Below, one piece after another: positions 10,601 through 22,027 of a stretch of DNA of 64,000 nt. A program made the position numbers and the translations under genes. The stretch is taken from contig JAKMXF010000348.1 of assembly GCA_024704765.1 (NCBI GenBank), positions 3,401 to 67,400 of the forward strand. Direction: 5' to 3'. Within the stretch, counting starts at the first letter, position 1, and every line of letters begins with the position of its first letter. This DNA comes from Oopsacas minuta (lineage: Eukaryota; Animalia; Porifera). The notes beneath the pieces are model-generated. The model made no database searches and was not told the origin of the DNA. It worked only from the letters and a program-made list of their open reading frames with translations.

Positions 10601-12587
10601 GTAGTTTTTCATCAATTATTTGGTGACAGGGTTTCGCCATCTCAAAAACGAATTGACTTAGACCAGAATTATCTGTAGTCAATTTTGTTATTTGTTTCAT
10701 TAATAGACAGAAATTGCCAGTGATCAGTCACAACGTATAGAGTCCCTTGAGACTACTTGTGGGGGGTTATCTAAAGATAATCAAATACTGAGGACTGAGA
10801 TTCAGAGGAATAAGGAGCAGTTACAAATATCTCAACATTCTGCTACACAGCTGACTTCTGCTCTTAATGAATCAGAACAGAGGTACAGTAGAATATTAAG
10901 ATATAATAATAGGTGTAGTAGCCCAGAATATACCCCTGTTAAGTTGTCTGGACATACATATTTGTAATGGATTAACGTGAATGCTACCTGTGTTTTATAT
11001 GGGCTTTACACTGGCTGTCTAATCTCGCCTGGGAATGTCACTTAAACTGGTTTTTCCCATATTAGAATGTTTACGTATTGTTATTTATTTATTATAACAT
11101 TCATTATACTGAATCGAACTCGTTCTTCAAGCTATCGACAACTTGAACTACCAATTCGTGATCAGGTCGCCCGACAACAGGGCGGTCCTAGAATCTCGCA
11201 TACCCTGGGCTAGGCCAGGGCAGGGCAATAATTTTCAAACTCTTGAGCAAATCCGCCGTTTATCCCTCTAGGATTGCCACTGACCCGAGTAAATTTGCCA
11301 ATTCTACATCCCTAGAATATTTATATATACCTGGCGGCCAAGGGGCAGGATATGAAATTGTTATAATCGTACTATATGAACCTTGTTCAGTTGATTCAAG
11401 CTTAAAACGAACTTTGATATCCGAAATGATGGCATGTTCACTATTTTATCATCGAAAATCTATTGTTCTATTATTCCTTGTTCTCTCTCAGATTTCAGAA
11501 TACAGAACGTGACCTTAAGATGGAGAGACAATGGCGTACAGCTCTACAGAGTGAGTTAGAACAGGTAAATACTGCTAATTTAGAGCTTACTAAAGAGAGC
11601 GAGCAGCTAGCAGCTTTGAAAATAGAACATGAAGGTCTGCAAATTAGAGTGGGAGACCTTCAAGAGGTTTGTAATAACATTTCTATATTAATTACATTTA
11701 ATCTTTGAATTTCTTTTCAATGTTATAAATACAGATTTTGGGTCATATAATATACAGCAGAACAAATATTAGTACGTGTAAATCGAGTGTACGAGTTCTA
11801 CTGTAGGTAGATGTTTAAAAAATAACATATGTTCGGGTTCATGCCAAAGTGTACTGACTTTTACTTTTGATCAGTCACCGTCACTCAATTATCCGAACAT
11901 CTCATTCTAACTTTCTAATTTGCGGCAATCCCATCCATGGTGTCCAGTTATTGACAATCATAGGGCGCTAGAAATGTGAATACTTAAATGATGGAATTGT
12001 TTCAAATTGTCTGTAATTTTAAATACTTATATTGAAAACCAAATGAATTAACGTAAACAAAGCTGATCAGTAATTTGTAAATACAACCGTGATGTTATCG
12101 CTGTTAACTTCTGTTATAATTAACCTGTATATGGGGAAAAGCTATTGGGACAAAAGTCCAGATTTTAGTTTCCTGGGAATAATTCTTCTGTCCAAATCAC
12201 GTGACCGTCGCTATTTTATTTCTCTCTAACATATGACCTACGTTTACGTAATAAAATATTATATAATTTCAATCCCATAATTAGGCATGTGCAGAGCAAG
12301 AGATTGCCTTAGTAGAAATGGGCCAGTCATTAAGTTCAGCACATCAAAACCTGTCAAATGTCAAACTCTCAAACAGACGCATGTGGGTAGAAGATAGAAC
12401 TACAAATGACTGTCAAAAGTGTCAAAAATCATTCACAATGAAACGTCGTAGACATCATTGTCGTAATTGTGGTGGAATATACTGTGCTGCTTGTTCAGAC
12501 AATAATTTCTCTATAGCAGCCTCCTCCAAGCCAGTTAGAGTCTGTGATAATTGTTATAATGTTTTGTGTGAAAGCTTACCTCAATGA
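7665..12587 (+). CDS. RUFY: RUN and FYVE domain protein (RUFY1/2-like), 5 exons: 7665-7944, 9094-10028, 10707-10882, 11492-11666, 12285-12587
   Basis: RUN motifs ERTNLLNMLKLSIKALIES and GKCRAWLRLSLM, coiled coil with DLKMERQWR, FYVE motifs WVED...RRRHHCRNCG...RVCDNC. All four introns are GT-AG with matching phases (1, 0, 2, 0). Confidence 0.93.
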
Positions 12588-13395
12588 CATACACAGCAGG
12601 TTCTATTTGATTGAAGAATGGAGGATTTTTATGTTTTTTTGCTGTAAATCTTTGTAAATTTGTTTTGCAATTATTATTACTTTATCGTTCTTTATTTTCT
12701 CAATTCAAATGTAATTATTCTGACAGAAAAATGGGAAGTGATTGATGGAAACACATTAATAGTTATATTTAAAAGCATACTCTTATATACCATATACAGT
12801 GACTAGAATTCGAGACACGATATTCCGACTTAGTATTAATTAATGCAATGAAATTTGATCCTTCACGCAAGTGAATAAACTGACTTATCAATTCAATTGA
12901 TTCTTTATTCCATGCAAATAGGAATATTACAATATTCGGAACGATCATTGCTCTTTGTTAAACTCTAAAAACAATTATAGTAATCAAACAATGCATTTAT
13001 CGTTTTAGGGAAAATAATAGTAACCCATGAAGTAATACTCGCTGTACAACATTAGCACCGAGTTAGCCGCACCCGAAAAATTTAAGATTACTTTTCCTCC
13101 CTGGTTAAGCTGGATAATCAGCTCTCCTCAGTGGCCAATTTTGGTGATCGAATTTCTCATCCTCTAGTCCACTATTCACAATGTTTCCAACAGGATGTTT
13201 GTGAAGTGCTCATTAATGAGATTGAGCGCCGTCTCTTTATCAATTATACATCAACTTAGATTAATCCCTATGCATAGACTCCACATCTTAACGCAGCTAA
13301 ACGTTCTAAGCCTGTAAGGGTGGTTAACAAACTTATTCGAGAACACGCTGTCTATACGTATTCTGATTATATAACTTGTTTTGTATTTTATTAAG

Positions 13396-16300
13396 ATGAA
13401 TTGTAGCGGATGTAATAGAAAACTATTGTCATTAGATGACGTCTGTTTTTTCATGCTAAGTCCTAAAGAAATACATTTCATAGTCAAGACTGAACGTCAA
13501 ATATTCGCACAGGATAAGTTGAGGAGTGATTGGGATTCTAAAAGAGGCACTAAAGTAACATGTATGTTCTGTGACTATGTAGTAGGTAAGAATATCCCTA
13601 TTGGTCCGAATAACATGAATGTAATTGCGTTTGGAACAGAGAAAGTTCGTTTATTCAACCAACCAAAGACAAGAATTGATAAATGGCCGAATTTTTATAA
13701 TATCTCCCCTTACAATTCAATCGAACAACGAACAATGCAAAATTTCTTTTGTCGCAATTATTGTTCACATACGAATAAAATTCTTAATCTACAATCAGGC
13801 AACAAATGGAAAATACATTACCCAAATATTGACAATATACAAGAATTCAATTTTACTGACATTTTACTGTCAAATATTATACCAAGGGAATATCAAATAA
13901 CTTGCTATATAGAAGCATTACAACGTGATCTGGTTATAGTGCTACCTACAGGGTCTGGTAAGACATTAATCGCGTCATTAGTTGCCGGTAAAATGAAGCA
14001 ATTAAATCCAAACTACATGGTGTTGTTCATTGTAGATCGTATACCGTTAGTTTTTCAACAGGGTGAAGCGCTTCGGCTTGACACTCATTTAAATGTGTGT
14101 TGTCTGTGTAGCGAGACCAGGACAGAGTTTATACTTAGAAAATTACGAGAGGGACATTATGATATTCTCGTATCAACCGCTGGAGCCTTTCTTAACCTCA
14201 TGGACTGTAATGAACTGAGTATTAATGCGTTTTGTCTAGTTATATTGGATGAGTGCCATCATGCAACAGGACAGCATGATTATGTGAGAATACTTGAGAG
14301 AATAAAGGTATGTTCTCCTCAGTATAAACCAAGGATAATAGGATTAACTGCTTCCCCACTATCTGCTAAAACCGATCTCTCTACTACAGTAAAACTCCTG
14401 AATGATTTTAAACAGCTGTTTTCTAATGCTCCTATCTGTCACAATATTAATCTTGCTGGTTATAAATTCGCTAACCAAAAGATTGAACTTATTACAGTTC
14501 CTAATAACGACTGGGCATTTCAATCGTACACACAAGCACTGTTAGATGAAATGCATAATGTAGCTGACGTAATTAATTGTATACGAGGTGAGAATATTAT
14601 TAAGAAAGAACCATGGAATGAACCTTACTCTATGCTACGTTTAAAGAAAGCTTGTGCCATTATACTCAGATTCTTTGATAGGGGTTTGAATGAACAAGTT
14701 CAGCTAATGAAATGCTATATTTCTGCGTTAGAAATCGCAGAATTGGTTGGGGTTTCTTATGCGAATAAAGTTCTCAATAATACACCACTGTGTGGAAAGA
14801 TACAATCTAGCTCTATACTATCGCCGCGACTTAACAAACTCTTAAAATTACTCTTGGAATACCCCAGAACATCTAAAATCATAATATTCGTACACACCAG
14901 ACAAGCCGGTGAGATCTTAACACGAATTCTGCAGGACAACAATGAAATATCTGATCGATTCTCTCCTCTGAAAATATTCGGACATGGTGGAGTTCTAGGG
15001 ATGAGTTGGGATGAAGAACAAGCTGAAATAATACAAAATTTCCGAAGTGGGAATTGTAACCTACTTGTCAGTACTTCTGTATTAGAGGAGGGATTAGACG
15101 TACCAGCCTGTGACGTAGTTATAAGGTTTGATGGAATTAAATCTCTTATTTCATTCGCACAAAGCAAAGGACGAGCACGTAAACTTGAAAATAGTAAATT
15201 CGTATTGATTCTCTCTCCAAGACAGAAATTGAAATATGATGAAATAAAACAAAGAGAAATAGTACTGAAACAAGCTTTGAATCAAATTGATTCCAGAAAT
15301 GCTGTAATGATTCCATCTACGAAAACTCTGATTATACAAAACAAAATATCTTCAAATCAGAGAAATATAGAAATCCCAGAGTATTATTTCGCTAGATTTG
15401 AGTGTGCGATTGAATTCTACATTAGTGGTGTCCATGATCAGAACGACATATTAGAAGGTTTGAATTGTATTTTGAGTAATGAATGTTTCCTCACGATTAA
15501 ACGGATCGACGTTGTAGATGCTGATGCACTTTGGAAACAAAGAGGTATTTTTTCGAAAGAAGACTGTTTGATTATTTGTGGCGTTCGTTCTCGTGACGTA
15601 ATACAATCTTACCGTTTGTTGAGTACTAAATGGGATTTTTATATACAAAGTATTGAAGATCAGCCATTTGTATGGACAAAGCTTGAAATTCATACAAAGC
15701 AAAGTTTGAATAATTTTTGTACTTGGCCAGTATCGAGTATGCTATGGGGTTCATTTCTTGATAAAACAACTGTCTCTATAACAGAGAGATCTGCTACTGA
15801 CGCTTCGTTAAGAATTGTTCCTAAACACTCACTCATAATATCTTTACCAGAAAGCGAGATTGAAATTGAAATAAATTTTATTATAATTCATCATTTTTTA
15901 CTCGCTTCATGGCAAGATAAGTATGTTAGCCTATTTATACCATTGTCCAGCTGTCCTATCGTACGTATGAAAGATATAGATGATTTTACGACTAGATTGA
16001 CATGTGACAACTGTCAGATTCTAAAGGTATTTGCTCAACATCCTGTCCTAGCTGTTACCTTACCATATACTGCATCTAATTGGATACAACTTTGGTCTAC
16101 ATTACATAGCTCTAGCTTATTTCCAGTACCGTTATTTGACTCGAAGATCCAAATTATGGAAACAAATTTCTTTAACCCATTTATACCACCGCTGGTCGAT
16201 TCGAATTATTGTGATAGAAAGCAGACAGAAGACTGTCTATGGTTATTATCTGTATTAAAATGTACACGTAGTGTGTGTTTAACCCGACATACAATTGATA

Positions 16301-19300
16301 TGATATTTCTATTTATTTCTCAATCAAATTCTCTTCAAAACTTACTTGCTATATCAGTTACACTCTCGAAATTGATTACTTTGTGTTCTACAGCGACTAC
16401 AAACTATTTCTTTGATATTTTGGGCTATTTTAATACAGAAATGGAGAGTATTCAGGGATTAGAACTTCAAGTAATACAACCACCGATCAATTACCGTTCT
16501 ATTGAATATGCAATGGTGACTCCATCAACCGTAATATGTCATACTCCCATCACAGTACAGTGTAGTAGATTGTATAGGAATTTTCCTGATGTTCGTTTCT
16601 TATTAGTTGCATTCAGAGATGAACAGAATCAAATCCTTCACAATAGAGACGTGCTAGGACGTGTAAGAGAAGTTTTAGTGGAAGGATTCGAGATTAATGG
16701 AGATCGTTTCTATTTTCTGTTATCAAACCCGAGTCAATTGAGGGAACATCGTGCTGTTTTTATACAAATACTGGATAGAGATTCGCCTGTTTGTGTGCTT
16801 AATGAAATTCGTAGGAAAATTCTAGGCACGACAGTTATTCGTGATGAGATAAAGTTTTTATCTCGTCTAGGCCTATTCTCTACTTCAGACATTCCAATGC
16901 TCCAAATTCCACAGAGTTCTGTTGGAGAGATTAACGATATAAGAGCTGATAACAATCAACTTTTGACTGACGGGAGTGGAAAGATATGTTATAATCTAAG
17001 TCATGAAATTTCTGCGAAACTTGGTTTTACCTTCCAGCGCAATCTTTCAGCTCTCCAAATACGTTTAGCTGGTTACAAGGGTGTCTTAACAGTAGCCAAT
17101 AGAGATGATCCAGACTTTTCTAGCATTAACTTACGTAAATATAAGATACTTGTCCGGCCATCTATGAAAAAGATGGAATGGACAGATTCTAGTCTTAACA
17201 TTGTAAGTTTGCCTACCTACGAGCCTTTCTTTATTAACCTATCTTTCATTAATCTAATTTCCAGTTTGAGTGATCCTTTAAGTCAATGGAATCCTGAACC
17301 TGTTATCAGAGAATTACATACTAAAGCATTAATGGATTATGGTCAAATTTTGGCTGATACAAAGTTGGCTAATCAATCGCTATCAATGCATCTTTTGAAT
17401 TACTCAATGAATATCAGTGAATATTTCGATGTTAGAACAGAGCCTTATTTCTTATCGTTATTACGTTGTATCTACCGATTTAATGTAAATAATTTGGTTA
17501 CGAAAGCTCGTATTCCTCTTGATAACGGTGGTCTATTCATGGGTATACCAGATCCTATTGGTGTACTTGATGATGGAGAGATATTTATTCAATACGAGAG
17601 AGATGGTGAGTCAAATACACAAATAATTGAAGGCCCCGTTATATTGTACAAACACCCTTGCCTCCATCCAGGAGACCTACTGTCTCCTATCGCAGTAGAA
17701 AAGAGAGAGTTGATTCATCTTAAAAATGTAATCGTGTTTCCTATCCGAGGTAGGATATCTCTGCCTGCATCTACTAGCGGTGGTGACCTTGACGGAGATT
17801 TGTTTGCAGTTATTTGGGAATCTGGTCTAATTCCGCCTCAGTATTCACTACACCCAGCTTTGAACTATGAAGAAATAGCTGAAAAAGGACATGCACTACA
17901 ACTAACGCTACAAGAACAGAAAATCCCATTATTAGAAGACAATGATAATACACAACAGAGACTGTCTACTGCATATTGTCGTGTTATTTCTAATGATTCA
18001 CTCGGGAAAATAGCTAATCTACATCTAGCGTTATGTGACCAGTTAGAAGATGGAGCTTGTAATCCATTAGCTATATCTGTTGCAGAATCACAGTCGATAG
18101 CTGTAGACTATCCTAAAACAGGCGTGGCACCTGTGATACCACAAGAAGCTGTTGGAATGTTGAGAGATAAAGGTTTTCCAGACTTCATGGAGAAAGACGG
18201 AGCGCAGTCTTATCCATCTACAAAACTATTAGGTGAACTGTATCGTAGTGCTAAGTCAGTATGTTACGCTGGAGAAGAAAATCCCTCCCATATTCATAGC
18301 ACAGTTGATATTAATAGAAATCCATTACATGACATTTCCACCCACTATCTCTATGTACCAGGTAGTGAGTGCTATATTGACGAAGCAAGAGCTACGTATA
18401 GCATATACGCCAATGCCATGCAACAAATAATGACGTCATTCGGGCTCGAAACTGAGGCAGAGACTGTGCTGGGCTTAATCATAAAATGTCATCCAATGTT
18501 ATCAGCTGATAAGAGAAAAACTAAGAAAGCATTGAACGCAGTCATACAAGCACTTTTTGAACAATTCCGTGATATTTTCTTCCAAGGAATTTCTACAAGA
18601 GATTCTATTGAATGTTCTAAGAAGGTATTTGCTTGGTATTACATCACTCACGCTCAGAGTTATGATACTATGGTTTTCTACTCATTTCCTTGGATAATGA
18701 ATGAATATTTATGTAATATTTCTAGTAAAAAGAGAAGATTTGAGTCTGAATCAAATGCTATTCTTGGTAGAACTGCTAGGGAATATCTCTCCAAAAACTC
18801 TGACTATATCAGAACGAATGTAGAATCTAAACTATCCACTTTCCCAATGGTCGAATCTTCCATCAGAAACTACATTGCTTCAACAATTACTAATAATCCA
18901 TACAGTGTTCCTATATTTAATATAACTTGTTTCGGTTCTGTTTCACTCTTCCTTTGTGAACCACAATCTGATTTAGATATCTCCGTCAACCCAACGCCCC
19001 TTTGTTATAACTATATATTCCCTTCCCCAGCTGACAGACAGGAATTTGAATTATTAAACATACACAAACAGATAAAACATATTCTAATGACTTTAGTATC
19101 ACCTGCAATTGATAGTATTTCCCATAGTAAGATGGAGAAATACACTGCACAAGTTCCTATAATCGCTATTACAGTCGATTCCCCATTAGACGCGAATAAT
19201 CAAGTTGATATTGATATTACTATTGGAAGTGATGGAGTACAGAAATGCGAGTATATAATGCAACTATACTGTGAGACAGGTGGCGTATTCTATGGTTGGC

Positions 19301-21189
19301 TTTGGATTTTAGTACACTGGGCTAGACATGTGGGAATATTGAAGTGTCAAACTTCAGTTGAGAATACTGGGATTATTGTAACAGCTGAGTTTGAGGCTCT
19401 AGCATTGTATATCTACGATAAGATGTCCAATAAGTCCCAGGATAATTGTATTCAAATGAGTGAGCTATCATGCAGTTTCCTACTGGACAAATTAATGAGA
19501 TCTGATATTGACTCAATATTGGGTTCAATGCTGGTGGAATTCTTCTGGCTTGGGATGAAGCTAACCTCCAAACAAGATTCCATTGTTTATGAATGGCCAA
19601 TTGAAGGTAAGCCAACACACACAATAGATGGGACTAATTTGAAGAAAATATCCTTTTTACTGTTTCAAGCCTGGCACTGTATAGTGTACACACGTGACTT
19701 AGCCAAGATATTCGAGCGAAATGATATACCATTAAAACTGAATAAACGCCTGTCATATAAAGTTAGCAATCGTATCAGAGCTTCTTGTCATTTCCATGAA
19801 TTACGTCTAACATCACTGACAGGCGCAATTATACATATTGAGGATTTGGGTAGACATGTGTTGATAACATCTCAAGGATCTGCCAGCTCTATCCATAAGC
19901 TCTCCATCGAATTAGCCAAACTAGAGAAAATTACTTCACTCACGAAAAAATACGCATTTAATGCGAATAAATACATCCTAGAAGATAGCTTTATTATAAT
20001 CTTCGTCAATCAATCATATAATATTCGAGTTAAACTTTTCCCCTTCACAAGTGCTTGTTTCAAGTTGTATGACACTCACAATGAACGTAGTCATGTAGTC
20101 TATGCATGTGAGACGGTAGATACTGCCTGGAAGCAGCAAGCTATTTCTAGATTGCAGTTTTTACTATTGGATCAGCTGGCCAAATTTCCTGTTACTAACA
20201 AGAAACTATTGGGAAGACTCAGATTTAAAACTCGATTTGGGTTTTTCTATGTTTTAGGTTCGAATGATTCTTTTCAATTATATGGTAATTGTATGTATTT
20301 ACAGGATTTTGAGCATTATTTGAAAAAGTCGTTACGATACAGGCGACAAATTTTTCGCGAATTCTTACCAATTAAAACTACTGATGATAATGAAAATTCT
20401 CTAGATAAAAAAACAACTCTATCTTCATTTCGTAATTCAGAAGAAACGCTTAGAGAAACTGTGGAGAAGAAAAGGAAGAATTATCCAAGTTGTTCATTCT
20501 GTCCAGGACTTCAAGAAATTACAAACTCTAATGATTACAACGTTTGTCAATCTATTTACACAACTGCTCTTGAACAGTGCGGGTTTATTACTTGTGAACA
20601 ATCAAAATCTTACACATGGATGATGGATATAAGAGTTACGAAGAGTTTTGACATTAGAATTAAACTAGATGATAGAATGAATATTTTTGCTATCAACGAG
20701 CGTCCGTTAGTATGGATGGTAGCAACTATAATAGCAGATAGGAATGTAGCTGATAAAGATGATAAGTTACATGACATCAGACTACGAATGGATACGACTG
20801 AGGATGTAGATCCTGGTTCTAACTTGTATAAATTTGTTTTTCCGAACGGCATTAAAGGCCCATTACTTACTGTCGGTCTGGATGGTATTCCAATTCCTTG
20901 TGGTGATTTAAAAGGCCGCTTGAAGATCATACGTCATAAAGTAAGATATATTTACTATAAACGAGGTTCTGTTATAGCTAAGATTACTATTGGTACTGAG
21001 TATAGCGGGAAAATGTCTCAATTCGGTAGGAAATTCTGTGAATTGTCATTATTGAATAATGAACATGAGTTAAGACAGGCTGTTGCAGGTGGGAATAATA
21101 GCAATGATATATTGAGAATAGCTGAAAATGCTGTGAATATATCGCTGGAAATATCCAAGGCTTTGGTAGCTAATCAATCACATTTGTAA
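13396..21189 (+). CDS. multidomain RNAi-type protein: RLR-CTD-like Zn domain + RIG-I/Dicer-type DExD/H helicase + RDR-type RdRP + Cid1/TUTase-like nucleotidyltransferase + KH-like segment + unknown C-terminal domain; single exon, about 2597 aa
   Basis: First ATG at 13396 (the ORF track starts at an upstream TTG). Helicase motifs PREYQ (13882), LPTGSGKT (about 13942-13965), DECHH (14248), GLTASP (14341), STSVLEEGLDV (about 15070), QSKGRAR (15160). RdRP motifs TDGSGKI, QIRLAGYKG, RPSMKK, KHPCLHPGD, GGDLDGD (DLDGD 17785-17799), AVDYPKTG. NTase motifs FGS (18931)...SDLDI (Asp 18970, 18976), VPII, IDIT (Asp 19213), VHWAR, LGSMLVEFF. Confidence 0.95.
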   Translation: MNCSGCNRKLLSLDDVCFFMLSPKEIHFIVKTERQIFAQDKLRSDWDSKRGTKVTCMFCDYVVGKNIPIGPNNMNVIAFGTEKVRLFNQPKTRIDKWPNFYNISPYNSIEQRTMQNFFCRNYCSHTNKILNLQSGNKWKIHYPNIDNIQEFNFTDILLSNIIPREYQITCYIEALQRDLVIVLPTGSGKTLIASLVAGKMKQLNPNYMVLFIVDRIPLVFQQGEALRLDTHLNVCCLCSETRTEFILRKLREGHYDILVSTAGAFLNLMDCNELSINAFCLVILDECHHATGQHDYVRILERIKVCSPQYKPRIIGLTASPLSAKTDLSTTVKLLNDFKQLFSNAPICHNINLAGYKFANQKIELITVPNNDWAFQSYTQALLDEMHNVADVINCIRGENIIKKEPWNEPYSMLRLKKACAIILRFFDRGLNEQVQLMKCYISALEIAELVGVSYANKVLNNTPLCGKIQSSSILSPRLNKLLKLLLEYPRTSKIIIFVHTRQAGEILTRILQDNNEISDRFSPLKIFGHGGVLGMSWDEEQAEIIQNFRSGNCNLLVSTSVLEEGLDVPACDVVIRFDGIKSLISFAQSKGRARKLENSKFVLILSPRQKLKYDEIKQREIVLKQALNQIDSRNAVMIPSTKTLIIQNKISSNQRNIEIPEYYFARFECAIEFYISGVHDQNDILEGLNCILSNECFLTIKRIDVVDADALWKQRGIFSKEDCLIICGVRSRDVIQSYRLLSTKWDFYIQSIEDQPFVWTKLEIHTKQSLNNFCTWPVSSMLWGSFLDKTTVSITERSATDASLRIVPKHSLIISLPESEIEIEINFIIIHHFLLASWQDKYVSLFIPLSSCPIVRMKDIDDFTTRLTCDNCQILKVFAQHPVLAVTLPYTASNWIQLWSTLHSSSLFPVPLFDSKIQIMETNFFNPFIPPLVDSNYCDRKQTEDCLWLLSVLKCTRSVCLTRHTIDMIFLFISQSNSLQNLLAISVTLSKLITLCSTATTNYFFDILGYFNTEMESIQGLELQVIQPPINYRSIEYAMVTPSTVICHTPITVQCSRLYRNFPDVRFLLVAFRDEQNQILHNRDVLGRVREVLVEGFEINGDRFYFLLSNPSQLREHRAVFIQILDRDSPVCVLNEIRRKILGTTVIRDEIKFLSRLGLFSTSDIPMLQIPQSSVGEINDIRADNNQLLTDGSGKICYNLSHEISAKLGFTFQRNLSALQIRLAGYKGVLTVANRDDPDFSSINLRKYKILVRPSMKKMEWTDSSLNIVSLPTYEPFFINLSFINLISSLSDPLSQWNPEPVIRELHTKALMDYGQILADTKLANQSLSMHLLNYSMNISEYFDVRTEPYFLSLLRCIYRFNVNNLVTKARIPLDNGGLFMGIPDPIGVLDDGEIFIQYERDGESNTQIIEGPVILYKHPCLHPGDLLSPIAVEKRELIHLKNVIVFPIRGRISLPASTSGGDLDGDLFAVIWESGLIPPQYSLHPALNYEEIAEKGHALQLTLQEQKIPLLEDNDNTQQRLSTAYCRVISNDSLGKIANLHLALCDQLEDGACNPLAISVAESQSIAVDYPKTGVAPVIPQEAVGMLRDKGFPDFMEKDGAQSYPSTKLLGELYRSAKSVCYAGEENPSHIHSTVDINRNPLHDISTHYLYVPGSECYIDEARATYSIYANAMQQIMTSFGLETEAETVLGLIIKCHPMLSADKRKTKKALNAVIQALFEQFRDIFFQGISTRDSIECSKKVFAWYYITHAQSYDTMVFYSFPWIMNEYLCNISSKKRRFESESNAILGRTAREYLSKNSDYIRTNVESKLSTFPMVESSIRNYIASTITNNPYSVPIFNITCFGSVSLFLCEPQSDLDISVNPTPLCYNYIFPSPADRQEFELLNIHKQIKHILMTLVSPAIDSISHSKMEKYTAQVPIIAITVDSPLDANNQVDIDITIGSDGVQKCEYIMQLYCETGGVFYGWLWILVHWARHVGILKCQTSVENTGIIVTAEFEALALYIYDKMSNKSQDNCIQMSELSCSFLLDKLMRSDIDSILGSMLVEFFWLGMKLTSKQDSIVYEWPIEGKPTHTIDGTNLKKISFLLFQAWHCIVYTRDLAKIFERNDIPLKLNKRLSYKVSNRIRASCHFHELRLTSLTGAIIHIEDLGRHVLITSQGSASSIHKLSIELAKLEKITSLTKKYAFNANKYILEDSFIIIFVNQSYNIRVKLFPFTSACFKLYDTHNERSHVVYACETVDTAWKQQAISRLQFLLLDQLAKFPVTNKKLLGRLRFKTRFGFFYVLGSNDSFQLYGNCMYLQDFEHYLKKSLRYRRQIFREFLPIKTTDDNENSLDKKTTLSSFRNSEETLRETVEKKRKNYPSCSFCPGLQEITNSNDYNVCQSIYTTALEQCGFITCEQSKSYTWMMDIRVTKSFDIRIKLDDRMNIFAINERPLVWMVATIIADRNVADKDDKLHDIRLRMDTTEDVDPGSNLYKFVFPNGIKGPLLTVGLDGIPIPCGDLKGRLKIIRHKVRYIYYKRGSVIAKITIGTEYSGKMSQFGRKFCELSLLNNEHELRQAVAGGNNSNDILRIAENAVNISLEISKALVANQSHL

Positions 21190-22027
21190 TTACTCATTAA
21201 CTTATATTTGTATTGTTTACTGATCATTTATATAATTTTCTATGTATTTAGTTTCATTTGTTTATGTTTTTGTTTTGGTTCATGTATATTAATATTTCTT
21301 TGTTTAATGTAGGAATATATATCTATATAGTAGACTCCGCTTATTATTGTCACATCGGATAAGGAAAATACTTCAAAAGAACAACTTTTATTTACAAACA
21401 AAGTTTAAAGTAACTAGTCATTTGTTGTAATTAATACTATCGCGTTTCTCTTTGTCGCGCTGCGCGGCTTGCGAACATTTTGTGTTTGCATGGGCCAGGT
21501 ACTTCGTGTCTCGAGTTGAGCAAAGTATAAAGTAGCAATATATTCACAATACCTTGGTGGTAAATTCATATTAGTAATCAGCGTTCCAGATTACCCCAGT
21601 ATAACGGTTGATAGCAAGTTTCTAGGATTAATTAGAAAATAGTTTACTTTATATTCATGAAAACAATAAATAATTTACATAAAAAGAAACTTGAATATGC
21701 GAAGTTCGGATTTAATGTACTTGATTAGCCCGATATGTCAGTTGAGAACAAGTCTGAGTATATTTCGAGATATCAACAATTTGTTCACTTTAATTCATAA
21801 AACAACAATAAATTTACATATGATTAATTCCAAAGTGTGAAATAAAAAATCAACATACTCGATTATCCCAATGTAATTGTTTACTTTTCTTATATCGTCA
21901 ACAGAAGGATATGTTATTCCCTATATTATATACGCAGATCATCTTCCCCAGTTATTACAATACAAAGTGGACAAACAAATAAACACAAACACACACCCCA
22001 CAATATTTGAGTTTTAATAATATATTT

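What the first reader, a model, noticed from the sequence alone, without database searches (positions are those of the whole stretch)
18850..19700. Catalytically intact Cid1/TUTase-like domain directly downstream of the RdRP
Seen: FGSVSLFLCEPQSDLDISV (GS at 18934-18939; Asp at 18970 and 18976), then VPIIAI...IDITIGSDGV (third Asp at 19213), LWILVHWARHVGI and LGSMLVEFF. This is the motif order of non-canonical PAP/TUTases (Cid1, GLD-2, Trf4, TUT7). Inference: all three metal-binding Asp are retained, so the domain is probably active. Its nucleotide preference (U, A or UG) cannot be read from sequence, and a pUG-like or uridylation mark feeding the adjacent RdRP would be the key mechanistic question.
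Basis: partly seen in the sequence, partly recalled or inferred. Interest (0 to 1): 0.78.

Follow-up and report, generated by a model that had tools for sequence, protein, structure and literature searches.

The report
RNA-tailing domain fused to sponge RdRP
A glass-sponge gene for an RNA-copying enzyme also carries, in the same 2,600-residue chain, an apparently working RNA-tailing domain of the Cid1/GLD-2 type; the domain is real and under selection, but the gene belongs to an old, little-studied family found in many eukaryotes.

Summary
Every motif lies at the stated coordinates, inside one uninterrupted ORF (13381/ATG 13396 to 21189).

- **Fold and sequence.** An AlphaFold model of the domain (pLDDT 83) matches only non-canonical poly(A)/poly(U) polymerases (Z 17-18.7). 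A 60-sequence family profile hits CutA, GLD-2, mtPAP, TbTUT4 and Cid1 at E 1e-14 to 1e-10, with GS, DxD and the third Asp aligned to their catalytic residues.
- **Conservation.** G, S, D1864 and D1945 are invariant in 60 of 60 sequences; D1866 is kept in 59. dN/dS against a 75%-identical relative is 0.11, as low as for the RdRP and helicase.
- **Distribution.** An exhaustive search found only 95 relatives. Every long one has the same helicase-RdRP-NTase-C-terminal order. Named members come from sponge, Hydra, an acoel, a flatworm, dinoflagellates, Diplonema and a liverwort.
- **Base and ribose contacts.** These differ from uridylyltransferases: Ala/Gly sits where Cid1 has Tyr212, so nucleotide choice stays open.
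- **Downstream modules.** A KH-like fold and a RESC2/Cet1-like triphosphate tunnel follow the domain.

Best reading: an active tailing module of a single-chain RDRC-like machine. No RNA or biochemical data exist. The scan found paralogues of this gene before, elsewhere in this genome.

The parts
13396..21189 (+). Whole gene: one intronless open frame. First ATG at 13396; the frame is open from 13381; stop at 21187-21189.
   Evidence: the homologue P0002 is also encoded without introns
13882..15177 (+). SF2 DExH helicase (DEAD/ResIII plus Helicase_C). GSGKT at 13951 and DECHH at 14248.
16516..18249 (+). Cellular RNA-dependent RNA polymerase (PF05183, E 5e-114). Catalytic DLDGD at 17785-17799.
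18298..18720 (+). Conserved linker between RdRP and NTase, present in all long family members. It may be the RdRP 'head' domain listed for the homologues.
   Evidence: no Pfam hit in this copy
18721..18888 (+). Three N-terminal helices of the NTase module (aa 1781-1836).
   Evidence: model; included in the structural alignments to TENTs from model residue 8 onward
18916..19224 (+). Pol-beta-type catalytic palm: five strands, FGS at 18931-18939, D1864 at 18970, D1866 at 18976, D1945 at 19213.
19231..19722 (+). PAP/OAS1-type central (PAP-associated) lobe. Invariant K1955 (19243). R1982 (19324) at the Cid1 K197 position. T2001-A2002 (19381-19386) at the Cid1 S211-Y212 position. WP..PTHTI hairpin around 19594-19626.
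   Evidence: Cid1 contacts from PMC3479196
19723..19947 (+). KH-like fold (aa 2115-2189) without a GXXG loop.
   Evidence: Z 8-9.2, 64-77 residues aligned, rmsd 2.0-3.0
19966..21186 (+). Triphosphate-tunnel domain (aa 2196-2602), most like trypanosome RESC2/RESC1, then Cet1/Pct1 RNA triphosphatases.
   Evidence: 8cdp_B Z 22.5, 284 aligned; Cet1 Z 17.0; conserved tunnel Arg/Lys

Best explanation
Window 18721-19722 encodes a complete, probably active terminal ribonucleotidyl transferase of the non-canonical PAP/TUTase (TENT) superfamily. It is built into the same polypeptide as a DExH helicase and a cellular RdRP, and is followed by a KH-like fold and a RESC2/Cet1-like triphosphate tunnel.

Shown: the fold; the alignment of GS, DxD and the third Asp to the catalytic residues of solved enzymes; their near-invariance across a eukaryote-wide family; purifying selection equal to that on the RdRP; and the fact that this NTase lineage occurs only in this fixed domain order.

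Inferred: it adds untemplated ribonucleotides to an RNA 3' end in cis with the RdRP, as the separate NTase subunits do in RdRP complexes (Cid12 with Rdp1 and Hrr1 in fission yeast; Rdn1/Rdn2 with Rdr1 in Tetrahymena). It would tail either the template, to mark or prepare it for copying, or the RdRP product. The C-terminal tunnel may hold a 5'-triphosphate end such as the one a de novo RdRP product carries.

Which nucleotide is added is open. The residues that stack on and sense uracil in Cid1-type enzymes are not kept.
For: Intact frame and coordinates. Fold: model pLDDT 83, pTM 0.81, five-strand sheet with D85/D87 at the start of strand 2 and D166 in strand 5. Foldseek top 50 hits are all ncPAP/TUTase/PAP at probability 1.0. 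VIA-align gives Z 17-18.7 with 255-275 residues aligned at rmsd 3.3-4.3 to TbTUT4, yeast PAP, RET2, GLD-2, URT1, Cid1, mtPAP, CutA and TUT7. Sequence: the 60-sequence profile hits CutA 1e-14, GLD-2 2e-14, mtPAP 3e-13, TbTUT4 5e-11 and Cid1 9e-11 across both lobes. The third Asp falls on the GLD-2 position where chain 4zrl reads Asp and chain 5jnb reads Ala; I take this to be an inactivating mutation but did not check it. Conservation: G, S, S1863, D1864, D1945 and K1955 in 60/60, D1866 in 59/60, R1982 in 55/60. All 19 sponge copies match PF22600. Selection: dN/dS is 0.11 for the NTase, 0.12 for the RdRP and 0.09 for the helicase, against L001. A second haplotype carries 3 synonymous changes and one Ile>Leu change in the domain, with no indels. 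Obligate fusion: only 95 hits among 1.84 billion representatives, all long ones collinear and the short ones fragments. No stand-alone relative turned up in the word search. RDRC precedent: PMC8694037. RESC2 binds 5'-triphosphate: PMC10201420.
Against: No activity has been measured for any member of this family. No RNA run holds the gene, so expression is untested. This copy is below Pfam's cut-off. The position of Cid1 Tyr212 (base and ribose stacking) is Ala or Gly in 50 of 60 members. The position of Asn171 is Lys or Thr/Ala, depending on which alignment is used, so the NTP pocket is atypical. In Nematostella, which has helicase-RdRPs, no secondary siRNAs were detected (PMC12768352). RdRP-coupled amplification in early animals is therefore unproven, and I did not check whether the Nematostella genes carry this NTase.
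Confidence: 0.7

Rival explanations
1. The domain is an active tailing enzyme but works independently of the RdRP in the same chain. For example, it might mark small RNAs or cleaved targets for decay or stabilisation, as Cid1, TUT4/7, HESO1 and CDE-1 do. On this reading the fusion serves only co-localisation.
For: The catalytic evidence is the same as for the best explanation. TENTs of many kinds act on RNAs that they do not help to synthesise (established knowledge of the family).
Against: This NTase lineage is never found apart from the RdRP, and the domain order is fixed across very distant eukaryotes. That argues for a mechanistic link, not just co-localisation.
Confidence: 0.15
2. The domain is a pseudo-enzyme: a TENT fold kept as a scaffold or RNA-binding surface, without transferase activity.
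For: The NTP pocket is atypical: Ala/Gly at the stacking Tyr position, and the K193 equivalent is variable. The neighbouring tunnel domain appears to have lost two of the three metal-binding Glu, as the pseudo-enzymes RESC1/2 have.
Against: G, S and two Asp are invariant and the remaining Asp is kept in 59 of 60 members at about 20% overall identity, together with an invariant Lys and a conserved Arg. Pseudo-enzymes usually lose these residues.
Confidence: 0.1
3. The domain makes a nucleotide second messenger or 2'-5' oligomers (OAS/cGAS-like) when the RdRP or helicase presents double-stranded RNA. On this reading it is a signalling enzyme, not a tailing one.
For: OAS shares the PAP/OAS1 substrate-binding lobe. 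The protein has sensor-like helicase and end-binding modules. There is a weak profile hit to a CD-NTase over the GS-DxD region only (E 0.02).
Against: No OAS, cGAS or CD-NTase appears among the top 50 structural matches by either aligner. All significant sequence hits are RNA-tailing enzymes. The nearest Atlas clusters are PAP_assoc/MTPAP-like.
Confidence: 0.05

Closest known systems
Non-canonical poly(A)/poly(U) polymerases (TENT family: CutA, GLD-2/TENT2, mtPAP, TbTUT4, Cid1, TUT4/7, URT1, Trf4)
   Same: The two-lobed catalytic module; the FGS motif, SDxD and third Asp; an Arg at the Cid1 K197 position; Thr/Ser at the S211 position; and the 'LGxxLxxFF' helix.
   Different: No subfamily is clearly closest on structure: Z values are tied, although the profile E-values are lower for CutA, GLD-2 and mtPAP than for Cid1. 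The sponge-only profile finds no canonical TENT among 1.84 billion proteins. Ala/Gly replaces the stacking Tyr/Phe. The Asn-Thr ribose and pyrimidine sensor is not clearly kept. The domain never occurs as a free protein; it is always embedded after an RdRP.
RdRP complexes with a separate nucleotidyltransferase subunit: S. pombe RDRC (Rdp1-Hrr1-Cid12) and Tetrahymena RDRCs (Rdr1 with Rdn1 or Rdn2)
   Same: The same three activities are physically joined: RdRP, helicase (yeast) and a Pol-beta NTase (PMC8694037).
   Different: Here they sit on one chain, and the helicase is a DExH SF2 type. Two further modules are attached: a KH-like fold and a triphosphate tunnel. Whether this NTase is orthologous to Cid12 or Rdn1/2 was not testable here.
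Helicase-RdRP fusions of the RDR-gamma group (Dictyostelium RrpA-C, Peronosporomycete RDR, Hydra and Nematostella RDRs)
   Same: An N-terminal DEAD/Helicase_C domain followed by an RdRP. A Hydra member (LOC105846402) is in the same NTase family (PMC4791657).
   Different: That paper does not mention an NTase domain. Only one preprint figure legend notes a PAP_NTPase domain, in two amoebozoan RdRPs.
RESC2/RESC1 of the trypanosome RNA-editing complex, and Cet1-type RNA triphosphatases (for the C-terminal module next to the NTase)
   Same: The triphosphate-tunnel barrel: Z 22.5 to 8cdp_B and 15-17 to Cet1/Pct1. Alternating conserved Arg/Lys on the strands.
   Different: No sequence-level match. 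The strand matching Cet1 motif A has no Glu-x-Glu, by positional reading only. RESC1/2 act as a free heterodimer in mitochondria (PMC10201420).

Membership tests
TENT / non-canonical PAP-TUTase superfamily | Pol-beta nucleotidyltransferase palm: a five-strand mixed sheet | tested here: met
   Model strands 67-72, 86-92, 137-141, 148-154 and 162-169. Z 17-18.7 to solved TENTs and PAPs.
TENT / non-canonical PAP-TUTase superfamily | hG[GS] motif after strand 1 | tested here: met
   FGS at 18931-18939. G and S are in 60/60 sequences. The motif aligns to the GS of CutA, GLD-2 and mtPAP.
TENT / non-canonical PAP-TUTase superfamily | Metal-binding triad: DxD on strand 2 plus a third Asp on strand 5 | tested here: met
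   D1864 60/60, D1866 59/60, D1945 60/60. They align to the catalytic Asp of solved enzymes.
TENT / non-canonical PAP-TUTase superfamily | PAP/OAS1-type central (PAP-associated) lobe contiguous with the palm | tested here: met
   Profile alignments run through positions 11-270 into the central lobe. Structural alignments span model residues 8-343.
TENT / non-canonical PAP-TUTase superfamily | Score above Pfam's curated cut-off (PF22600, PF03828 or PF01909) | tested here: not met
   This copy scores 22.1-25.1 bits against the cut-off of 27 for PF22600. There is no PF03828 hit. All 19 sponge copies do match PF22600 at E<1, the best at 1.7e-7.
TENT / non-canonical PAP-TUTase superfamily | Aromatic residue stacking on the incoming base (Cid1 Y212, TbTUT4/RET2 Tyr, MEAT1 Phe) | tested here: not met
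   The aligned position is A2002: Ala 32, Gly 18 of 60. The Cid1 role comes from PMC3479196. This rests on sequence-profile alignment, not a superposition.
TENT / non-canonical PAP-TUTase superfamily | Template-independent ribonucleotide addition to RNA 3' ends | not testable with these tools
   Needs a biochemical assay.
Uridylyltransferase subgroup (Cid1/TUT4/7/URT1) | Asn ribose/O2 sensor and a His or acidic nucleotide-recognition motif | tested here: inconclusive
   The Asn171 position maps to K1955 in the CutA alignment, or to the next residue (Thr/Ala/Ser) in the GLD-2 alignment and by spacing. The profile alignments stop before the recognition loop. H2080 in 'PTHTI' is kept in sponges but in only 26/60 family-wide.
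RDRC-type assembly (RdRP + helicase + NTase) | RdRP, helicase and Pol-beta NTase physically associated | tested here: met
   All three lie in one open frame with intact motifs GSGKT, DECHH, DLDGD and GS/DxD/D. The order is fixed in all long relatives.
RDRC-type assembly (RdRP + helicase + NTase) | NTase orthologous to Cid12 or Rdn1/Rdn2 | not tested
   No reference sequences or solved structures of these proteins were available through the tools.
Cet1-type triphosphate tunnel metalloenzyme (C-terminal neighbour) | Barrel fold with basic residues lining the tunnel | tested here: met
   Z 15-17 to Cet1/Pct1 and 22.5 to RESC2/1. Conserved R2441, R2467, R/K2469, R/K2513 and R/K2518.
Cet1-type triphosphate tunnel metalloenzyme (C-terminal neighbour) | Three metal-binding Glu (Cet1 E305, E307, E496) | tested here: inconclusive
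   By position, the first tunnel strand (model 167-178) has no Glu, and only E2554 is kept on the last strand. No residue-level superposition was possible.
KH domain (module right after the NTase) | Beta-alpha-alpha-beta-beta-alpha fold with a GXXG loop | tested here: not met
   The fold matches at Z 8-9.2. The helix segment aa 2126-2147 is continuous in the model and contains no G-x-x-G.

The most novel reading that the evidence does not exclude
This is a distinct, obligately fused TENT lineage with a remodelled nucleotide pocket (no stacking Tyr). It would work as one unit with the KH-like fold and a RESC2-like 5'-triphosphate-binding tunnel. The chain would hold the triphosphate 5' end of an RdRP product, or of a foreign RNA, while tailing a 3' end. 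That would give a self-contained sense-copy-tail machine, ancestral to eukaryotic RDRCs and still present in animals. A corollary: the kinetoplastid guide-RNA binders RESC1/2 may derive from this family's C-terminal module, since a diplonemid carries a full-length member.
Probability: 0.2. Interest if true: 0.8.

Novelty: new member of a known kind. Interest (0 to 1): 0.58.

Why it matters
RdRP-based silencing repeatedly depends on a partner nucleotidyltransferase: Cid12, Rdn1/2, RDE-3 with its pUG tails, and CDE-1. How tailing and copying are coupled is still unclear, partly because the complexes are hard to reconstitute.

A natural single chain carrying helicase, RdRP and an intact TENT domain is independent 'Rosetta-stone' evidence that these activities belong together. 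It also offers one recombinant protein in which the coupling could be measured directly. A candidate 5'-triphosphate reader sits next to the TENT domain.

The family is present in sponges, cnidarians, acoels and flatworms, so it bears on what RdRPs do in animals that show no classical siRNA amplification. Databases list these genes only as RdRPs, because the NTase scores just below Pfam's threshold.

Tried and rejected
- Single-sequence search of solved structures with the domain: only chance-level hits to Pub1 RRMs.
- Sponge-only profile against solved structures: only a 25-residue match to CutA, E 0.39. The wider 60-sequence profile was needed.
- Word search for stand-alone relatives of 180-580 aa using the 60-sequence alignment: 5,723 candidates, none at E<=0.001.
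- Scan of genome contigs: the first call failed because the alignment had no conserved stretch. The second found 11 pattern matches but no relative. That collection holds prokaryotes only, so this says little.
- RNA evidence: no RNA run holds the stretch. The four holders are DNA contigs from one sample and cover gene and spacer alike.
- Mobile-element origin: no direct, inverted or tandem repeats flank the gene.
- Pfam on the linker, the KH-like part and the tunnel part: nothing. Profile of the C-terminal part against solved structures: nothing.
- Reading nucleotide specificity: the profile alignments end before the recognition loop, and model coordinates cannot be downloaded, so no residue-level superposition on Cid1 was possible.
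- Phylogeny with Cid12, Rdn1/2 and RDE-3: not done, because no reference sequences were obtainable without typing them from memory.
- OAS/cGAS-like reading: considered and set low, since none appears among the structural or sequence matches.
Full report
**Numbering.** Residues are counted from the first codon of the open frame (13381). The first ATG is at 13396, so subtract 5 to count from Met. Residue n starts at 13381+3(n-1).

**Observation.** Window 13381-21189 (+) is one open frame of 2602 codons, preceded by an in-frame stop at 13372. The window has about 35% G+C, so an open frame of this length cannot be chance. The coordinates are exact:
- G1852 at 18934 and S1853 at 18937
- D1864 at 18970 and D1866 at 18976
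- D1945 at 19213

The rest of the chain is also intact: helicase motifs GSGKT and DECHH, and the RdRP motif DLDGD. Pfam finds DEAD/ResIII/Helicase_C (aa 168-599) and RdRP PF05183 (aa 1046-1623, E 5e-114). It finds only a sub-threshold MTPAP-like palm (aa 1839-1951, 22-25 bits against a cut-off of 27).

**What the domain is.** A word search with the region found 19 full-length relatives at 39-75% identity. One of them is annotated 'RNA-dependent RNA polymerase 1-like' in the glass sponge Oopsacas minuta. In their alignment the GS, DxD and third Asp are invariant, and all 19 copies match PF22600.

An AlphaFold model of aa 1780-2140 is confident (pLDDT 83, pTM 0.81). It shows a five-strand sheet with the DxD at the start of strand 2 and the third Asp in strand 5, followed by a helical lobe.
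- Foldseek's top 50 solved matches are all tailing enzymes or poly(A) polymerases: Trf4, MEAT1, CutA, GLD-2, URT1, TUT7, TbTUT4, Cid1, PAP, mtPAP and TUT1.
- VIA-align gives Z 17-18.7 with 255-275 aligned residues across model residues 8-343. All subfamilies are tied.
- Searches of the ESM Atlas, by sequence features and by shape, point to the same families.

**Wider family.** An exhaustive profile search of 1.84 billion representatives found only 95 proteins at E<=0.001. No canonical TENT was among them. A segment-by-segment search showed that every long hit has the same order: N-terminal module, helicase, middle region, RdRP, linker, NTase and two C-terminal segments. The short hits are fragments that carry parts of the neighbouring segments.

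Named members come from these organisms:
- the sponge Oopsacas minuta
- Hydra vulgaris
- the acoel Convolutriloba
- the flatworm Macrostomum
- the dinoflagellates Prorocentrum/Polarella and Effrenium
- Diplonema papillatum
- the liverwort Marchantia paleacea

No stand-alone relative was found by word search. This NTase lineage therefore seems to exist only fused behind an RdRP.

**Catalytic integrity.** I aligned 60 domains; the distant members are 19-29% identical to the window copy.

| Residue | Kept in |
|---|---|
| G1852, S1853, S1863, D1864, D1945, K1955 | 60/60 |
| D1866 | 59/60 |
| R1982 | 55/60 |

This profile matches solved enzymes by sequence alone:

| Enzyme | E-value |
|---|---|
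| CutA | 1e-14 |
| GLD-2 | 2e-14 |
| mtPAP | 3e-13 |
| TbTUT4 | 5e-11 |
| Cid1 | 9e-11 |

TUT4/7, Tailor, URT1 and Trf4 follow. The printed alignments put GS, DxD and the third Asp on the catalytic residues of CutA, GLD-2 and mtPAP. The third-Asp column is also the GLD-2 position where one crystal construct (4zrl) reads Asp and the other (5jnb) reads Ala. I take this to be an inactivating mutation but did not check it.

Against the gene for P0002 (L001, 75% identical, also intronless), dN/dS is 0.11 for the NTase, 0.12 for the RdRP and 0.09 for the helicase. dS is about 1.4-1.9, near saturation, so these ratios are rough. A second haplotype in the sample's DNA contigs carries three synonymous changes and one Ile>Leu change in the domain, and no indels. 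The spacer downstream has many more changes and several indels.

**What differs from known tailing enzymes.** Cid1's contacts come from PMC3479196:
- S90, K193, K197 and S211 hold the phosphates.
- Y212 stacks on ribose and base.
- N171 and T172 read the 2'-OH and O2.
- H336 reads O4.

The alignments map these positions as follows:
- FGS, R1982 (K197) and T2001 (S211) are kept.
- The Y212 position is A2002 (Ala or Gly in 50 of 60).
- The K193 position is variable.
- The N171 position is either the invariant K1955 or the next residue (Thr/Ala/Ser), depending on the alignment used.
- The alignments stop before the nucleotide-recognition loop. A 'WP..PTHTI' hairpin has a His kept in sponges but in only 26/60 family-wide.

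The chemistry core is therefore intact, but the base pocket is not that of a uridylyltransferase. Nucleotide choice cannot be called. This mapping rests on profile alignments, not on a superposition.

**Surroundings.** The domain is not immediately after the RdRP. A conserved segment of about 157 residues lies between them. It may be the RdRP 'head' domain that the collection's precomputed Pfam hits list for the homologues.

A model of aa 2115-2602, downstream of the NTase, is confident (pLDDT 84.7) and shows two modules.
- **KH-like fold** (Z 8-9.2). It has no GXXG loop.
- **Triphosphate-tunnel barrel.** It is closest to trypanosome RESC2/RESC1 (Z 22.5, 284 residues aligned), then to Cet1/Pct1 RNA triphosphatases (Z 15-17).

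RESC2 binds the 5'-triphosphate of guide RNAs and lacks two of the three metal-binding Glu of Cet1 (PMC10201420). In the sponge domain, alternating Arg/Lys on the strands are conserved. The strand that corresponds by position to Cet1 motif A has no Glu, and only one Glu is kept on the last strand. I therefore lean towards a triphosphate reader and away from a hydrolase. That is an inference.

**Mechanism.** Separate NTase subunits are known partners of RdRPs. Each Tetrahymena RDRC contains Rdr1 with Rdn1 or Rdn2 (PMC8694037). The fission-yeast RDRC is Rdp1-Hrr1-Cid12 (retrieved papers that use these names; I did not read them, so the composition is from established knowledge). The fixed fusion here is independent evidence that tailing and copying are coupled.

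The most likely model is that the NTase extends an RNA 3' end, template or product, in cis with the RdRP, while the tunnel may hold a 5'-triphosphate end.
- Shown: fold, motifs, conservation, selection and obligate fusion.
- Inferred: activity, substrate, coupling and the role of the tunnel.

**Rivals:**
- an active tailing enzyme uncoupled from the RdRP
- a pseudo-enzyme, made unlikely by the invariant catalytic set
- an OAS/cGAS-like messenger synthase, with no such structural or sequence match

**Novelty.** Helicase-RdRP fusions are published for Dictyostelium, oomycetes, Hydra and Nematostella, without mention of an NTase (PMC4791657). A preprint figure legend notes a PAP_NTPase domain in two amoebozoan RdRPs. 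Nematostella RdRPs are induced by a viral mimic, yet no secondary siRNAs were seen (PMC12768352). I did not check whether those genes carry this NTase.

Earlier notes of this scan describe paralogues with the same architecture elsewhere in this genome, and call the family old and eukaryote-wide. My searches agree. This copy is therefore a new member of a known but biochemically unstudied kind. The family-level observations made here are, as far as I could find in the library, undescribed:
- the NTase occurs only as a fused domain
- the stacking Tyr is missing
- a KH-like fold and a RESC2-like tunnel follow it

**Limits.**
- No RNA data exist for this organism in the runs served.
- Model coordinates could not be inspected directly.
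- No tree with named TENTs could be built.

Noticed in passing
window 19966-21186: The C-terminal 407 residues fold as a triphosphate-tunnel barrel. The closest match is trypanosome RESC2/RESC1 (Z 22.5), ahead of Cet1/Pct1 (Z 15-17). A full-length family member exists in Diplonema, a relative of kinetoplastids. RESC1/2 might therefore derive from this module. There is no sequence-level support.
   Followed up: partly
window 19723-19947: A KH-like fold (Z 8-9.2) lies between the NTase and the tunnel. It has one continuous helix where KH domains carry the GXXG loop, and no G-x-x-G in the sequence.
   Followed up: partly
window 21673-22006: A very high-copy repeat starts about 480 bases after the stop codon. 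Summed contig depth is up to about 37,000, against about 140 over the gene, with many contig breaks and joints. No tandem structure was found.
   Followed up: no
window 12318-12587: A short ORF upstream reads like a FYVE-type zinc finger (RRHHCRNCG...). It is probably an exon of a neighbouring gene. This rests on reading the sequence only.
   Followed up: no
window 13396-13600: The N-terminal Cys-rich module gives a weak Yippee/Mis18 zinc-fold hit (E 0.015, below cut-off). It was not folded here.
   Followed up: no
P0100/P0144 (Marchantia paleacea), P0029/P0030 (dinoflagellates), P0096 (Diplonema): The fused family has a very patchy spread: a liverwort, dinoflagellates, a diplonemid and several early-branching animals. 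Ancient origin with many losses, gene transfer, and contamination were not told apart.
   Followed up: no
window 18500-21189, run X4: One run's contigs carry a second haplotype of the gene: 10 single-base changes, 5 of them synonymous, and no indels. Summed depth over most of the coding stretch laid (18500 to about 21000) is 3-5 times that of the spacer. This may reflect collapsed paralogues and is unexplained.
   Followed up: partly
P0001-P0019 precomputed Pfam lists: Only 5 of the 19 sponge homologues have PF22600 on record, and this copy scores just under the cut-off. That is probably why databases label these genes only as RdRPs.
   Followed up: yes
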